Below, in pieces: positions 2,853 through 56,036 of a stretch of 64,000 nt of DNA. The stretch's first letter is position 1. Each line of letters begins with the position of its first letter. The translations under genes and the position numbers were made by a program. The stretch lies in the IMG/VR virus record IMGVR_UViG_3300022602_000024, positions 186,001 to 250,000 of that record; one strand, written 5' to 3'. A model generated the notes under the pieces. That model was not told the DNA's origin, made no database searches, and saw nothing but the letters and a program-made list of their open reading frames with translations.

Positions 2853-3017
2853 TTATTCAGTTTTATTGCTGCGACTGCGTCCACGTGAGTCAGACTCAAG
2901 AATCCTTACATAACTGCGAATAAACGCACCACGTTGATGTGCGTCAACAATCTGTGCTGCTGAACGTTTTACCTGTTTAGGTACTTTTACTGCTTTTGCA
3001 TCATATCCTGAACTCAT
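2853..3017 (-). CDS. Small basic hypothetical protein (54 aa, below ORF-track cutoff)
   Basis: Manually read MSSGYDAKAVKVPKQVKRSAAQIVDAHQRGAFIRSY...; SD AAGGAG upstream. Confidence 0.7.
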   Translation of the reverse strand: MSSGYDAKAVKVPKQVKRSAAQIVDAHQRGAFIRSYVRILESDSRGRSRSNKTE

Positions 3018-3036
3018 AACTTTCTCCTTTTAAAAT

Positions 3037-3399
3037 TTATTCATCTTTGGGCCATTCCCGCCATTGCCAACCTAACTTCCGGAAGTCTTCTTCAATTTCT
3101 TCTGTGACTGTACCTTCAGTGACATAACCTGATGTGTATTCACCTTCGGTCATTATGCCTGAGCAATACCAATCAAGATAATCGCCTTGCTCTAATATGT
3201 CAGCAACGATTCCGCCGGCACTGCGCCAACTACAACTCCACCAATCGTCTCGCAGTATGGGAATAACATCTCGACGCTGCCATTGCGTATTGCACAAGGC
3301 AGCATAGATATTTTGTGCGTACCTTTGGCTGGCTTGTGCCTTGGCCACAATCCAATCAGTAGTATACAGATCTTGCGCAAGATTGTCGTGGTTAGTCAT
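3037..3399 (-). CDS. Conserved phage hypothetical protein (paralog of 889..1254)
   Basis: YAQNIYAALCN, WSCSWRSAG, WYCSG. Confidence 0.75.
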   Translation of the reverse strand: MTNHDNLAQDLYTTDWIVAKAQASQRYAQNIYAALCNTQWQRRDVIPILRDDWWSCSWRSAGGIVADILEQGDYLDWYCSGIMTEGEYTSGYVTEGTVTEEIEEDFRKLGWQWREWPKDE

Positions 3400-7039: not shown

Positions 7040-8155
7040 TTAAACACCCAAGTTGTAGGACTTAGACCATATGGGTTTTAGTTTACCAATACCGCCAGGT
7101 GTAACAAACGCATTTTGATTTAAAAAATTGTAGAACTTTTTGTCTGACAAAAAATTATAAATTGATCGTAGATATGTCATTCCCACTTTGTTTTCTGCAC
7201 TTATTATATCGCGTAAAAATTTTTCTCCGTTTCTAAGTTGCAAATCAGGAGTTACTTCTAAGCTATAATATCCTTCGGAGGAACTGATATATATTTTTTG
7301 AAAAGCACTCATACCAGGTATTAACTCTGGGTGCCGCCCGTGTATGTTGTAAATTAATTGATATTCGAGCTTATTTGTTTCTCTGACACGTGGATCGGCT
7401 ACAAGATTTGGTTTGTCAGGTCTTGTTTGTTGTATCATTTTCAAGGTATTTTTTGCAATATGACTTTGTTTTAAATTAATCATTGGTTCGAGAAAAAAAC
7501 AATCAATATTTTCGTGTCCAAATGACAGTGAAGACAAGATATCATTTTGTTTACTATACCAATAAGGTGCTTCGTAATAAACTGAAGATTTTTCAAGTCC
7601 TAATACAACCACATAATCGGTATCATTGTATTTTCTCTGACAATAAATGTTAAAGTATTCAGCATCAGCGGCCCGTCCCACTTTTAAAAAACGACCCTTA
7701 TTTTGAAACATCCAGTCATCGCCGTACTCAGGATGTTCTTCGTAAATTATATTATCTTTATCAACTGTGGGTAGTTTAACAACTGTTATTTCTGTTGTTG
7801 GGTCTGGATGATTTTCGACCATCCATTTTGCATGAGCATTGATGGTAGTGATGTCGTCAACAAACACCATTATTTCGTCTATATGAATATTGTTTTGTAC
7901 AAAAATATTGTATATGGTATGGCTATCAGTCCCCCCAGACCAAGGAAGTATGATTTTCTTATGTTTGTTTCTAAGGAAGACTGCATGGCGAGTCATTAAC
8001 TCGTCTATGGTTTCTACCGGGTCTTGAGTCCAATTCAGTTTACTGTATTCAGCATCGAAACAATAAAATGTAATTGGTTTGTTGGATTTGTAGGACTCGT
8101 AATAAGCAAGATAAGGGTTATATAAGATTTTATTATTTACTTGATAATGTAGCAT
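7040..8155 (-). CDS. PP-loop (adenine nucleotide alpha-hydrolase-like) ATP pyrophosphatase family protein
   Basis: WSGGTDS PP-motif near N-terminus; substrate unknown. Confidence 0.65.
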   Translation of the reverse strand: MLHYQVNNKILYNPYLAYYESYKSNKPITFYCFDAEYSKLNWTQDPVETIDELMTRHAVFLRNKHKKIILPWSGGTDSHTIYNIFVQNNIHIDEIMVFVDDITTINAHAKWMVENHPDPTTEITVVKLPTVDKDNIIYEEHPEYGDDWMFQNKGRFLKVGRAADAEYFNIYCQRKYNDTDYVVVLGLEKSSVYYEAPYWYSKQNDILSSLSFGHENIDCFFLEPMINLKQSHIAKNTLKMIQQTRPDKPNLVADPRVRETNKLEYQLIYNIHGRHPELIPGMSAFQKIYISSSEGYYSLEVTPDLQLRNGEKFLRDIISAENKVGMTYLRSIYNFLSDKKFYNFLNQNAFVTPGGIGKLKPIWSKSYNLGV

Positions 8156-8169
8156 AGGAGTTTGAAGAG

Positions 8170-8491
8170 ACTGGTAGCTTATTCTGTTACGAGGAAAGCT
8201 ACCGAAACCCTAAGCAGTGTTTAGGCTGCTAATGCGAACAGTTCGTCGTTTGCGTTTACGTTTTTTGCTTCTACGACCGGGTTACCCCAATCCTAACGGG
8301 TTTCACATTCCCGAGCGCCACTATTCTTACTCTTTGCCCAATCGATCACCATGTCAGGCCCATCATAAAAACACAATACCAAAGTAAATTTACAGTGAAT
8401 ACCAAAGTAAATTTATGCTCTTATGGTGGACCTGGAGGCTTCGAAGCCTCTTCTTGAACACTTTTCTTAATAACAGTTTACGCTGTTCAAG
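8170..8491 (-). ncRNA. ssrA: Circularly permuted (two-piece) tmRNA: acceptor piece ~8491-8424, intervening segment 8423-8362, coding piece 8361-~8170
   Basis: Acceptor stem GGGCCTG (8361-8355) pairs with CAGGTCC-A-CCA (8434-8424) with G3:U70; tag ORF 8253-8221 = ANDELFALAA*; helix 2 pairings TTGGGCA/TGTTCAA and TAAGAATAGT/ACTGTTATTA; CCA half lies upstream of 5' half. Outer ends approximate. Confidence 0.93.
8375..8415. repeat. 18-nt direct repeat in the tmRNA intervening segment
   Basis: AATACCAAAGTAAATTTA at 8375-8392 and 8398-8415. Confidence 0.95.
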
Positions 8492-8557
8492 TATTTATTA
8501 TATGGTATGTCGAAACCATTGTCAAGCGGTTTTACTTGGTTTCGACTAAATAATATT

Positions 8558-9055
8558 ATGCTACACAAACATCACATTATCCCAAGATATCTAGGCGGGA
8601 CAGACGATCCTTCTAATCTAGTTGAACTAACTATAGAGCAACACGCAGAAGCACATCGACTACTTTATGAACAACACGGCAATTGGCAGGACTATGTTGC
8701 GTGGCAAGGACTTGCCAAACTTGATGCTAACTTTGATGCCGCTAAACAATCTATGCTGGAAGGTAGCAGAAGAGGAACAGCCACGATGATTGCTAATCGT
8801 AAAGGAAAAAAGTGGGAAGAAATCTATGGGAAGAAAAGAGCCGCCAAAATAAAATCTAAATGTAAATTAAGTCGAAATGGCAAAACCTGGAACGGCAAAC
8901 TATATGAAATAACTCACCCAGATGGGACTGTGGAAACAGTTGAAGGATTACGCCAATGGTGTTTAGATCGAGGTTATAATCCTAACAACTTTGGAAACGC
9001 TTGTTTGAGAGGTGGTGTAACAAATGGTGGATTTAGGATTAAAAGGTTGGTTTAG
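8558..9055 (+). mobile_element. Free-standing HNH homing endonuclease (likely start MLHKHH at 8558)
   Basis: HKHHIIPRYLGGTDDPSNLVELTIEQHAEAH motif, basic NUMOD-like C-terminus; TAAATA 5 nt before ATG. Confidence 0.85.
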
Positions 9056-11450: not shown

Positions 11451-11490
11451 ATTGTATGTTGTATAAATACAACATAATAAGGAATTTCCA

Positions 11491-30039: not shown

Positions 30040-30074
30040 AAGTAATGTAACTGTAATATAACAAGATATAAATA
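30040..30074 (+). promoter_or_regulatory. Pho-box-like repeat plus late TATAAATA promoter
   Basis: AAGTAAT-gtaa-CTGTAAT, 11-nt gap, TAAATA. Confidence 0.5.
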
Positions 30075-34927: not shown

Positions 34928-34952
34928 TGAAAACTCCTAATTGAACTAATAT

Positions 34953-35180
34953 TTATTTTGCTAAAGTCAGACTGTCTTTAAAAATCTTCCAACAACTTTC
35001 CCAAGACCAACGATGACTGGCTTGTTCTACTTGTGTTCTATCCATCATTATACACTGATCCACTGCGGCACGCAAGCCCACAGATTCCGAAACCATAAAT
35101 CCAGTTATGCCTTGATCTACAACATCCTTGGTTCCTAAGTGTACATCACTAATGAAAATAGTCCTGTAAGTTTTGTTCAT
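34953..35180 (-). pseudogene. In-frame chimera: N-terminus of LpxH/PlcP-like phosphoesterase joined to C-terminus of GT4 glycosyltransferase
   Basis: YRTIFISDVHLGTKD | VVDQGITG...RWSWESCWKIF. Confidence 0.7.
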
Positions 35181-38442: not shown

Positions 38443-38508
38443 TTGATTGCTCCATAAGGTAAGTCTTACCTAAATATTTATAAAGCAATCTACTGAACTT
38501 AAGTGCTA

Positions 38509-41612: not shown

Positions 41613-41912
41613 TTAGTCTATCTTCTTTGCTATTTCTTCGTAGAAAGAGTCTAGTTCCCCGCCAAATTTGCCCGTTAATATAGGCATTAAATCTCGACAC
41701 AGTTGATAGTTTTTGGCATTGTAAGCATTTATAAACTCTTGGTGCAGATTCTTGTAACTTTCCAATGTAGACATTTCCATCACAATCTTTTCTGCTGGCA
41801 GTACACAATACACCGGAGTAGGCTCGCCATTGACGTCAAAAGTTTCAAGCTCTAACAAGGTATGCTTGCTCTTTAGCAAATGAATTGCAGTTGGTTCCCA
41901 AACTATTTGCAT
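41613..41912 (-). CDS. Hypothetical protein
   Basis: ORF coupled to exonuclease. Confidence 0.65.
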   Translation of the reverse strand: MQIVWEPTAIHLLKSKHTLLELETFDVNGEPTPVYCVLPAEKIVMEMSTLESYKNLHQEFINAYNAKNYQLCRDLMPILTGKFGGELDSFYEEIAKKID

Positions 41913-42445
41913 TAACGTTCCTTTGATATTTTTAATCTATGATATATTTCCTGCACACCTTGTGCTTGGCTAATACAATCTTCTAAGGCATTGTGTAGGC
42001 CGGCTTTGTTTTTTTCTCTAGGATCGCCATGTACTCCAAACAAGGTACGACTATCACGTATTTGCCAAAACTGCCAAGGTGTAGGCCAGCCCATTTGTCT
42101 ATAGATGTTTTCTAGTATCACAATATCAAATGCAGGGCCTTGGCACCAAATATTATTTACGCCAACTAAGAATCTATTCAGTTGTTGATACATGTCGGTT
42201 AGGCTGATGCGTCCGGTTTCGCCTAATGCTTCTTCACGAACATCTTCAGCTTGTCTCCCCCACCATTCAAGAGTATCTTCTTGTACCTCACGGCCCAGTT
42301 CTAACTGTTCGTTAACATCAATTCGGAAATACAATCCGTCTCCGAACCGGTCAACTTCAAAAGGATCAAACTTGACTGCGCCTAGTGTGAGTATGGCACA
42401 GTCAGGGCGGGTTCCTAACGATTCTAAATCAATCATACAATCCAT
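41912..42445 (-). CDS. DEDDh 3'-5' exoribonuclease (Rv2179c-like)
   Basis: MIDLESLG, WCQGPAFD, HNALEDC. Confidence 0.88.
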   Translation of the reverse strand: MDCMIDLESLGTRPDCAILTLGAVKFDPFEVDRFGDGLYFRIDVNEQLELGREVQEDTLEWWGRQAEDVREEALGETGRISLTDMYQQLNRFLVGVNNIWCQGPAFDIVILENIYRQMGWPTPWQFWQIRDSRTLFGVHGDPREKNKAGLHNALEDCISQAQGVQEIYHRLKISKER

Positions 42446-42465: not shown

Positions 42466-42945
42466 TTACTTAGTTGTCAAGATTTTGTGGCTTTCTGCTT
42501 CAGCCACACGTCGACGCAAATTGGTACTGGAGAAACTGTGATCTCGTCCATTGTGTACAATTTCGATACCACGTGCCCAGCAGGCTTCATCACCGGTAAA
42601 TCGTTTGCCTTCGTACTCAACACCCAATACACGTACATCAATTGGTAATGTAAGTAAGATGTCTACTAGGTCTTGCTCCGTGCTATATACCACAACTTCA
42701 TCTACGTATCTGCAGCCTGCCAATTGTATTTGACGTTCCACAATGCTTTGGATAGGTTTGTTTTTGGTATCGGGGCGATCAATTGTGGGATCTGTTTGCA
42801 AGCCAGCAATTAAATAATCGCAATGATTTTTGGCATCCGATAACATGGCCACGTGTCCAGCATGTAAAAGATCAAACGAACTAAAAACTATACCAATTCG
42901 TTTTCCATCGGCTTTGAGTTTTTTAAAATTATTAAATATGTTCAT
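42466..42945 (-). CDS. Cytidylyltransferase (TagD/RfaE-like)
   Basis: FDLLHAGH (HxGH), YVDEV, SSTNLR. Confidence 0.9.
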   Translation of the reverse strand: MNIFNNFKKLKADGKRIGIVFSSFDLLHAGHVAMLSDAKNHCDYLIAGLQTDPTIDRPDTKNKPIQSIVERQIQLAGCRYVDEVVVYSTEQDLVDILLTLPIDVRVLGVEYEGKRFTGDEACWARGIEIVHNGRDHSFSSTNLRRRVAEAESHKILTTK

Positions 42946-43634: not shown

Positions 43635-43684
43635 GATATCTCCTATACATTATTTATTACATTGACAACATTTAACCTATCATT

Positions 43685-55992: not shown

Positions 55993-56036
55993 AAAATTTC
56001 AACCTTAATATAAGGTATTTATGCTAAAACTACATA

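What the first reader, a model, noticed from the sequence alone, without database searches (positions are those of the whole stretch)
8170..8500. Phage-encoded circularly permuted (two-piece) tmRNA
On the minus strand the 3' half of the tRNA-like domain (T-arm, CAGGUCC-A-CCA ending at 8424) comes before the 5' half (GGGCCUG from 8361), separated by a 62-nt intervening segment. The halves form a 7-bp acceptor stem with the G3:U70 alanine determinant. The tag ORF 8253-8221 encodes ANDELFALAA*, a ClpXP-type degron of betaproteobacterial style. An ATAAATA late-type element at ~8492-8498 sits directly upstream. Established knowledge: permuted tmRNA is known from alphaproteobacteria, some marine cyanobacteria and a few betaproteobacteria, and phage tmRNAs are known. 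The ORF track misses this gene entirely. Inference: the phage supplies its own ribosome-rescue RNA late in infection.
Basis: partly seen in the sequence, partly recalled or inferred. Interest (0 to 1): 0.8.

Follow-up and report, generated by a model that had tools for sequence, protein, structure and literature searches.

The report
Two-piece tmRNA gene in jumbo phage
A 354-kb freshwater jumbo phage carries a real, intact, circularly permuted (two-piece) ribosome-rescue RNA gene, but phage-borne two-piece tmRNAs are already documented, so this is a new member of a known class with a few unusual details.

Summary
On the minus strand, two Rfam models (tmRNA_permuted 94.9 bits; beta_tmRNA 85.6 bits) and ARAGORN at relaxed threshold call a permuted tmRNA with tag ANDELFALAA. 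The window is part of a 354-kb IMG/VR phage contig that recurs in at least 18 freshwater metagenome runs.

Across 113 unique members the acceptor stem is 100% paired, G3:U70 is invariant, and P2, the T-stem and other helices show compensatory changes.

The window copy has a 6-nt T-loop. Independent assemblies confirm it, and the identical arm occurs in at least five other diverged genes, so it is a lineage trait and not decay.

No direct RNA evidence for this copy was obtained, and no SmpB was found among the ORFs tested. Phage two-piece tmRNAs are already published (Buchholz 2022: 53 of 133 unique phage tmRNAs). Verdict: a real feature and a new member of a known kind.

The parts
8497..8525 (-). 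Perfect sigma-70-type promoter: -35 TTGACA at 8525-8520, 17-nt spacer, -10 TATAAT at 8502-8497. The predicted start is about 8492-8490.
   Evidence: It matches 12 of 12 positions. Such promoters with at most 1 mismatch number 11 in the window against 0.9 expected, and 10 of them are on this strand. The Rfam beta_tmRNA model itself aligns to this promoter.
8492..8499 (-). AATAAATA, a 7-of-8 match to the T4-late-type TATAAATA, overlapping the -10 box. The predicted start is about 8486-8485.
   Evidence: The motif is at chance frequency overall. It lies 16-30 nt upstream of about 10 gene starts in the window. It ends 65-72 nt from the CCA end in 20 of 104 unique family upstream regions.
8424..8490 (-). 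Acceptor piece, about 62-67 nt. P2 5' strand 8484-8454, T-stem 8450-8446 paired with 8439-8435, 6-nt T-loop UUCGAA 8445-8440, acceptor 3' strand 8434-8428, discriminator A 8427, encoded CCA 8426-8424.
   Evidence: Rfam alignment, ARAGORN and covariation. The T-arm sequence is confirmed by independent DNA contigs and recurs in at least 5 other diverged genes.
8362..8423 (-). Intervening segment, 62 nt, predicted to be removed during maturation. It holds a 23-nt tandem duplication with 17-nt cores at 8414-8398 and 8391-8375. The leader UUUUUAUGAU just 5' of G1 is conserved.
   Evidence: The length across the family ranges from 17 to about 490 nt. A co-occurring variant replaces 49 nt with 15 nt (table 5c).
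8163..8361 (-). Coding piece. Acceptor 5' strand 8361-8355, D-loop analogue 8354-8342, P2 3' strand 8341-8314, hairpin Ha 8313-8297, hairpin Hb 8292-8275, tag frame 8253-8221, hairpin H5 with the stop codon in its loop 8230-8213, and a 3' hairpin or putative pseudoknot at 8211-8173.
   Evidence: Rfam. Compensatory changes: P2a 95% paired, Hb 99%, H5 91%, 3' hairpin 82%. The cofold recovers the acceptor stem, Hb, H5 and the 3' hairpin with z = -3.5.
8221..8253 (-). Tag reading frame: resume codon GCA, peptide ANDELFALAA, stop UAA.
   Evidence: The AND..(F/Y)ALAA pattern is conserved in family members retrieved without reference to the tag.
8507..9055 (+). HNH homing endonuclease gene, divergent from the tmRNA. 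Its start codon lies inside the tmRNA promoter spacer. It is an insertion specific to this phage strain.
   Evidence: PHROG 655, 1e-20, and Pfam HNH. It is absent at this place in relatives L020 and L017. L201 has a 98.8% identical tmRNA without the -35 box.
7040..8155 (-). Downstream ORF of 371 aa with unknown function. No terminator or separate promoter lies between it and the tmRNA, so it is probably co-transcribed.
   Evidence: No minus-strand terminator was found. The close strain L206 and L017 have a terminator plus an own promoter here. Homologues of the ORF occur in L017, L154 and L160.

Best explanation
This is a functional ssrA gene of the circularly permuted, betaproteobacterial type, carried by a lytic-looking 354-kb freshwater jumbo phage.

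Proposed mechanism. A precursor is transcribed from an overlapping promoter pair: a consensus sigma-70 promoter read by host RNA polymerase, plus a possible late-type ATAAATA element. Host tRNA-processing enzymes cut it. RNase P cleaves at G1 (8361), and 3' trimming stops at the encoded CCA (8424). The 62-nt spacer is discarded. This leaves an acceptor piece of about 65 nt and a coding piece of about 190 nt, held together by the 7-bp acceptor stem and the long P2 helix. Host AlaRS charges the complex through G3:U70. With SmpB and EF-Tu it enters stalled ribosomes, translation resumes at GCA, and ANDELFALAA is added, marking the product for ClpXP-type proteolysis. The benefit to the phage would be to keep ribosomes free while host mRNA is being destroyed and translation demand is high.

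Shown here: gene identity, permuted architecture, intactness, purifying selection on structure and tag, and phage location. Inferred: transcription, processing, charging, the partner proteins and the benefit.
For: Two covariance models score above their gathering thresholds, and ARAGORN gives a permuted call with the same tag.

Family covariation on 113 unique relatives: acceptor stem 100% canonical with G3:U70 in 113 of 113 and 4 pairs with double changes; P2a 95% with all 7 pairs compensated; T-stem 94.5%; Hb 99%; H5 91%. Shifted-partner controls give 11-82%.

The tag pattern AND..(F/Y)ALAA is conserved in members retrieved independently of the tag.

The 6-nt T-loop arm is confirmed by independent assemblies. 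It recurs unchanged in at least 5 genes that are only 68-74% identical overall. These carry different promoters, spacers and complete tags, and show compensatory P2 changes.

The promoter is a perfect sigma-70 match in a phage that is rich in such promoters. Both promoter types are positionally conserved across the family.

Phage context: DNA ligase, HNH, tail and virion proteins, a 354-kb viral contig, and viral nearest clusters. The tmRNA-ligase synteny holds in about 14 related loci.

The phage recurs in at least 18 freshwater DNA runs dated 2016-2023.
Against: There is no direct RNA evidence for this copy. RNA-library contigs on the tmRNA core come from relatives, and only a 53-nt contig (depth 14) lies on the spacer repeat. 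RNA runs hold only 14-30% of the gene's words, which is the conserved core shared by relatives.

Its beta_tmRNA score is the lowest among the family members tested, 85.6 against 97-167 bits, and ARAGORN misses it at default settings.

The T-loop is one nucleotide short and, taken alone, folds as a 6-bp stem with a tetraloop.

No terminator follows the gene.

No SmpB was found among the window ORFs tested. The other 290 kb of the genome were not examined.

The host is unknown.
Confidence: 0.77

Rival explanations
1. It is a decaying, non-functional copy (pseudogene) of a captured tmRNA gene.
For: It has the lowest beta_tmRNA score of the tested family members. ARAGORN calls it only at sub-threshold settings. 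The T-loop is 6 nt. The terminator found in close strains is missing.
Against: The 6-nt T-loop arm is conserved in at least 5 diverged genes that have intact tags. All helices pair, with compensatory changes relative to relatives. The tag frame, resume context and CCA are intact. The promoter is perfect. The gene is near-identical in independent metagenomes.
Confidence: 0.07
2. It acts mainly as a competitor or re-programmer of host trans-translation rather than as a simple supplement. It would titrate SmpB or AlaRS, or replace the host tag with a phage-chosen tag so that tagged proteins meet a different fate.
For: There is a precedent: the DS6A tRNA-like-domain-only tmRNA, a form shown to inhibit endogenous tmRNA (PMC4131195; PMC11915505). 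Tags in the family vary at positions 4-5, and some are long and atypical, such as a 26-residue tag ending VLA. The exact tag ANDELFALAA is present in 83 viral stretches but in only one 1.8-kb MAG contig among 185,579 species genomes. The T-loop is deviant.
Against: The tag keeps the canonical AND...ALAA degron pattern. The full mRNA-like domain and resume context are conserved. Host tags could not be compared because the host is unknown.
Confidence: 0.1
3. It is host DNA: an assembly chimera, or a prophage boundary or attachment site within a bacterial ssrA gene.
For: Many mobile elements integrate into ssrA (PMC4383910, listed). Assembly graphs break at the conserved tmRNA core.
Against: The gene sits inside a 354-kb viral contig, between phage genes in an order conserved in relatives. 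Independent contigs bridge the HNH gene, promoter and acceptor piece, and the close strain L206 spans 9227-8182. The gene is complete with its own promoter. No integrase was seen among the neighbours tested. The tag is essentially absent from bacterial genomes.
Confidence: 0.03

Closest known systems
Betaproteobacterial two-piece tmRNA (Rfam RF01850; the third permuted lineage of Sharkady and Williams 2004, as cited in PMC9004378)
   Same: Same gene order: promoter, P2 5' strand, T-arm, acceptor 3' strand with CCA, spacer, acceptor 5' strand, P2 3' strand, tag, 3' hairpin. It has G3:U70 and a tag of the ANDExFAxAA style. It scores above the family gathering threshold.
   Different: It barely passes, at 85.6 against 84 bits. 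The T-loop is 6 nt. Two hairpins lie between P2 and the tag where the model has one. The terminal terminator hairpin of the model is absent. It is carried by a phage. Its nearest relatives score better with the alpha model.
Published phage-encoded permuted tmRNAs: Methylophilales phage Melnitz, Pelagibacter phages HTVC008M and Mosig, phiCbK-like Caulobacter phages, cyanomyophages and Bordetella phage PHB04 (PMC9004378, Table S1)
   Same: A complete two-piece ssrA in a large, lytic-looking aquatic phage. In Melnitz the gene also lies just downstream of an early promoter and directly upstream of a protein gene.
   Different: Melnitz is alpha-type and linked to a glutamine riboswitch. The window gene has no blastn similarity to any of 50,697 deposited phage records. 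It belongs to a freshwater family so far seen only on uncultivated viral and metagenome contigs.
One-piece tmRNAs of phages (mycobacteriophage Bxz1 group, Bacillus phage G) and of huge phages (PMC4131195; PMC7162821)
   Same: Phage-carried ribosome-rescue RNA in large genomes.
   Different: Those have the standard, non-permuted gene form.
Mycobacteriophage DS6A tRNA-like-domain-only tmRNA
   Same: A phage-borne tmRNA derivative that could interact with SmpB.
   Different: The window gene keeps a full coding piece with an intact tag frame.

Membership tests
tmRNA (ssrA) | tRNA-like domain with a 7-bp acceptor stem carrying the G3:U70 alanine identity pair, discriminator A and 3' CCA | tested here: met
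   GGGCCUG (8361-8355) pairs with CAGGUCC (8434-8428), followed by A and CCA. G3:U70 is invariant in 113 of 113 relatives.
tmRNA (ssrA) | T-arm with a canonical 7-nt T-loop | tested here: inconclusive
   A 5-bp T-stem is present, but the loop is 6 nt (UUCGAA). This is real and conserved in a subclade. Every other family member I examined by eye has a 7-nt loop.
tmRNA (ssrA) | Short tag reading frame that starts at a GCA resume codon without an AUG or SD and ends in a hydrophobic ALAA-type degron plus a stop codon | tested here: met
   8253-8221 encodes ANDELFALAA*. ARAGORN reports the resume context. The pattern is conserved family-wide.
tmRNA (ssrA) | Long P2 helix connecting the tRNA-like and mRNA-like domains | tested here: met
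   The Rfam alignment pairs 8484-8454 with 8341-8314. P2a is 95% canonical with all 7 pairs compensated, and P2c is 95%. The distal parts aligned poorly.
tmRNA (ssrA) | Pseudoknot PK1 upstream of the resume codon | tested here: inconclusive
   Two hairpins are found there. Hb is well supported and Ha is supported by eye. A loop-to-downstream pairing (AUGU with ACGU) is possible but was not tested.
tmRNA (ssrA) | Score above the curated covariance-model threshold | tested here: met
   RF04321 94.9 against 47 bits; RF01850 85.6 against 84 bits.
tmRNA (ssrA) | Alanylation, SmpB binding and tagging activity | not testable with these tools
   This needs biochemistry. No SmpB gene was found among the ORFs tested in the window.
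Permuted (two-piece) tmRNA | The 3' half of the tRNA-like domain, ending in CCA, is encoded upstream of the 5' half, with a spacer between them | tested here: met
   CCA ends at 8424, G1 is at 8361 and the spacer is 62 nt.
Permuted (two-piece) tmRNA | The precursor is cleaved into two RNAs and the spacer is discarded | not testable with these tools
   Only assembled contigs were available. There is no end information for this copy. Indirect support: the spacer is hypervariable in length and sequence.
Betaproteobacterial subtype (RF01850) | Best-scoring clan member is the beta model, with beta-specific 5' and 3' elements | tested here: met
   Beta is the retained clan hit for the window, and most relatives score 97-167 bits. 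However, the nearest subclade members L024, L039 and L085 score best with the alpha model, and the beta terminal hairpin is missing here.

The most novel reading that the evidence does not exclude
The window gene is one representative of a large tmRNA lineage that is maintained by phages and is not a recent capture from a host. The lineage consists of beta-type two-piece genes that evolve by shuffling modules: tRNA-like domain, pre-tag hairpins, tag allele, 3' hairpin and promoter type. It includes a subclade with a non-canonical 6-nt T-loop. In several members the discarded spacer is used as an expression slot for a small protein gene. If so, phages have been diversifying the ribosome-rescue RNA, and possibly the fate of tagged proteins, independently of their hosts.
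Probability: 0.4. Interest if true: 0.6.

Novelty: new member of a known kind. Interest (0 to 1): 0.42.

Why it matters
Standard annotation misses this gene. The ORF track cannot see it and ARAGORN at default settings does not call it, so phage tmRNAs of this type are under-counted.

The gene adds a freshwater, beta-type, jumbo-phage example to a class known mostly from marine alpha-type and cyanobacterial-type cases.

The wider family found here offers natural experiments for tmRNA biology:
- a conserved 6-nt T-loop;
- spacers from 17 to about 490 nt, some carrying ORFs;
- interchangeable tags and promoters.

The family could also serve as a marker for linking uncultivated freshwater phages to hosts that use two-piece tmRNA. 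For the single finding as submitted, the biology is expected rather than surprising.

Tried and rejected
(1) "The tag ANDELFALAA is phage-specific and therefore special." The tag pattern hit 83 viral stretches but only one MAG contig among 185,579 species genomes. However, retrieval through the 3' motif, independent of the tag, showed many tags in the same family, such as ANDSQFALAA, ANDEQFALAA and ANDEKFALAA. ANDELFALAA is therefore one allele. I downgraded the idea.

(2) "ATAAATA is chance." That was my first reading from the overall counts. I reversed it after the positional analysis in the window and across the family.

(3) "The 6-nt T-loop is an assembly error or a lesion." Rejected on the evidence.

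(4) [quoted passage not shown] Rejected. The acceptor piece lies 340-490 nt upstream, separated by a nested ORF.

(5) Similarity to cultured phages: megablast and blastn found nothing.

(6) Host inference through a UDP-glucose dehydrogenase homologue returned only viral clusters. The host stays unknown. The abundance of sigma-70 consensus promoters argues for a proteobacterial-type RNA polymerase and against a Bacteroidota host, despite the bin label of L085. This point is inference.

(7) RNA evidence: the single read-laying run gave only assembled contigs dominated by relatives, so it does not show expression or RNA ends.

(8) RNAalifold on the whole family recovered only the core helices, because the modules do not align. 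I counted pairs for explicit helices instead.

Full report
OBSERVATION

- T-arm 8450-8435.
- Acceptor 3' strand CAGGUCC 8434-8428, discriminator A 8427, CCA 8426-8424.
- A 62-nt spacer, 8423-8362.
- Acceptor 5' strand GGGCCUG 8361-8355, giving seven pairs including G3:U70.
- The frame GCA AAC GAC GAA CUG UUC GCA UUA GCA GCC UAA at 8253-8221.

Rfam gives two hits above the curated thresholds. tmRNA_permuted scores 94.9 bits (gathering score 47) and beta_tmRNA scores 85.6 bits (gathering score 84). The ARAGORN tool found nothing at default settings. ARAGORN with -ps reports a permuted tmRNA with the same domains and the tag ANDELFALAA.

GENOMIC CONTEXT

The window is part of IMGVR_UViG_3300022602_000024, a 354,429-bp viral contig. 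Neighbouring genes include:
- an ATP-dependent DNA ligase;
- a 5'-nucleotidase-like protein;
- tail and virion proteins;
- radical SAM proteins;
- an HNH homing endonuclease directly upstream of the tmRNA.

A UDP-glucose dehydrogenase homologue falls in viral clusters. No deposited phage genome is similar at the DNA level, and the ligase is at most 37% identical to those of cultured phages. The same sequence is held by at least 18 freshwater or lake DNA runs from 2016-2023. This is an uncultivated freshwater jumbo phage. The host is unknown.

A LARGE FAMILY

A degenerate pattern for the tag peptide found 83 stretches on viral contigs. ARAGORN called 69 of them, and every call is permuted. The same pattern found a single 1.8-kb MAG contig among 185,579 species genomes.

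That retrieval was conditioned on the tag. I therefore repeated it with a conserved 3' motif, TAGGGT-N4-16-CCTCGTAACAGAA. The tags it recovered are varied: ANDSQFALAA, ANDEQFALAA, ANDEKFALAA, ANDSRFALAA and others, all sharing AND..(F/Y)ALAA. ANDELFALAA is therefore one allele in a large family.

Representative members score 97-167 bits with beta_tmRNA. The window copy, at 85.6, is the lowest. Its nearest subclade (L024, L039, L085) scores better with the alpha model.

The tmRNA lies near the DNA ligase in about 14 loci. The closest relatives, L017 and L020, keep the local gene order. This argues for inheritance within a phage lineage.

STRUCTURE AND SELECTION

I analysed 113 unique members with the two pieces joined in un-permuted order. 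RNAalifold recovers the acceptor stem, the T-stem and proximal P2. Explicit pair counts give:
- acceptor stem 100% canonical, G3:U70 in 113 of 113, four pairs with double changes;
- P2a 95% canonical, with all seven pairs compensated;
- P2c 95%;
- T-stem 94.5%;
- hairpin Hb 99% (31 sequences);
- hairpin H5, which holds the stop codon in its loop, 91%;
- 3' hairpin 82%.

Controls with the partner column shifted give 11-82%. The distal P2 segments and hairpin Ha could not be assessed this way, because different modules occupy those positions.

A thermodynamic cofold of the window's two pieces recovers the acceptor stem, Hb, H5 and the 3' hairpin, with z = -3.5.

THE 6-NT T-LOOP

The window's T-arm is GAGGC-UUCGAA-GCCUC, one nucleotide short of the 7-nt loops in the other members. 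On its own it prefers a 6-bp stem with a tetraloop.

It is not an error. Contigs from two independent DNA runs match with no differences across it.

It is not a private lesion either. The identical 27-nt arm plus CCA occurs in one further viral contig and eight metagenome contigs. These represent at least five other genes that are only 68-74% identical to the window gene. They have different promoters, spacers of 62-197 nt, compensatory P2 changes and complete tags: ANDELFALAA, ANDEQFALAA, ANDSQYLVAANA and a 26-residue tag. I read this as a tolerated, selected variant of the tRNA-like domain.

EXPRESSION SIGNALS

A perfect TTGACA-N17-TATAAT lies at 8525-8497. Such promoters with at most one mismatch occur 11 times in the window against 0.9 expected. 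Ten are on the main coding strand, and those that precede annotated genes precede DNA or RNA metabolism genes.

Its overall frequency is at chance level. However, about ten copies lie 16-30 nt upstream of start codons, including that of a 940-aa virion protein.

Across 104 unique family upstream regions:
- ATAAATA ends 65-72 nt from the CCA end in 20;
- a sigma-70-type -10 box ends 70-74 nt from the CCA end in 24;
- three regions, including the window and L024, have both promoter types in place.

Both promoter types are therefore plausible. "Late only" is not established.

The HNH start codon lies within the promoter spacer. A 98.8% identical tmRNA without HNH (L201) lacks the -35 box but keeps TATAATAAATAC. 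The -35 element therefore seems to have arrived with the HNH insertion.

No terminator follows the gene. The close strain L206 and L017 have a terminator plus a separate promoter for the downstream ORF. The window carries a different, recombinant 3' module.

RNA EVIDENCE

Only assembled contigs were available. In a lake metatranscriptome, contigs lie on the HNH gene and on the spacer repeat (53 nt, depth 14). The contigs on the tmRNA core come from relatives. Many aquatic RNA libraries hold 14-30% of the gene's words, which corresponds to the conserved core shared by relatives. Expression and processing of this copy therefore remain inferred.

COMPARISON WITH WHAT IS KNOWN

Permuted tmRNAs are established in Alphaproteobacteria, Betaproteobacteria and Cyanobacteria (PMC11915505).

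Phage tmRNAs were listed in 2014 (PMC4131195) and reported for huge phages in 2020 (PMC7162821).

Buchholz et al. 2022 (PMC9004378) describe a two-piece tmRNA in phage Melnitz. They found 53 of 133 unique phage tmRNAs to be permuted, mostly in aquatic phages. They state that all three permuted lineages are shared with associated phages.

The tag ANDELFALAA appears in no paper of the searchable library.

The finding is thus a new member of a known kind. The family-level features are modest novelties.

VERDICT

It is a real, intact, selected, phage-encoded two-piece tmRNA gene of beta type. I put the probability that it functions in ribosome rescue with host factors at about 0.77. Expression timing is unresolved between early, late or both. 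Interest is moderate.

Noticed in passing
L020:11626-12081(-), L018:4627-4941(+), and the spacers of L109, L133 and L140: In five relatives the spacer between the two tmRNA halves is 220-490 nt and holds a complete same-strand ORF of 68-151 aa. Each ORF starts 11-23 nt after the CCA, behind a Shine-Dalgarno-like UAAGGAG or UAAGGAAG, and stops 1-13 nt before G1. It is a protein gene nested in the discarded spacer of a split RNA gene. The ORFs have no Pfam or PHROG family. No pair of them gives a BLAST match at the thresholds used. ARAGORN misses L018 and L020.
   Followed up: partly
window 8507-9055 (+) and 8497-8525 (-): The HNH homing endonuclease gene is a strain-specific insertion. Its first codons supply the -35 box and spacer of the tmRNA's sigma-70 promoter. 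Relatives without HNH (L201, L020, L017) lack that -35 box.
   Followed up: partly
window 8156-8250; L206, L017, L022 and L060; read-laying table 7: The tmRNA locus is mosaic. The window's 5' two-thirds match L017 and L206 at 92-98% identity, but its 3' hairpin module matches L022 and L060 and lacks the terminator. Co-occurring variants in the same samples carry other 3' modules and other spacers. Across the family, tRNA-like domains, pre-tag hairpins, tag alleles and 3' modules appear in different combinations. Assembly graphs break at the conserved core.
   Followed up: partly
window, e.g. 56016-56022, 34950-34956, 43651-43657, 38475-38482, 11462-11469 and 30067-30074: (T)ATAAATA lies 16-33 nt upstream of about ten gene starts, including a virion protein gene. 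Consensus sigma-70 promoters precede the ligase, an endonuclease and an exoribonuclease gene. This suggests two promoter classes, early with host sigma-70 and T4-late-like. No late sigma factor was looked for.
   Followed up: partly
L003, L012, L014, L025, L029, L040, L064, L122, L142, L154 and L189: Some family members do not encode the full 3' CCA. The acceptor ends ...CAC or ...CACC, followed by UAAG or UGAG, so they would need CCA addition. L003 also has a second, partial tmRNA_permuted hit at 2951-3156 (58 bits).
   Followed up: no
L199, and two loci: A few family members encode long atypical tags of 26-28 residues, ending AAVLA or EALAV instead of ALAA.
   Followed up: no
window 41912-42445 (-) and 42466-42945 (-): There is a 3'-5' exoribonuclease of the Rv2179c-like family (Pfam 2e-37) next to a cytidylyltransferase-like protein, each behind a sigma-70-type promoter. 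These are possible RNA 3'-end processing functions carried by the phage.
   Followed up: no
L085 (CAILDT010000304.1): The only hit to the tag pattern in the genome collection is a 1,794-bp contig binned into a Bacteroidetes MAG. It carries a permuted tmRNA of the window's subclade and is probably a mis-binned phage fragment.
   Followed up: no
window 8375-8414 (-): The spacer contains a 23-nt tandem duplication. L024 has one copy, while the window, L017, L201 and L206 have two. A lake metatranscriptome contig of depth 14 carries a variant array of the same unit.
   Followed up: partly
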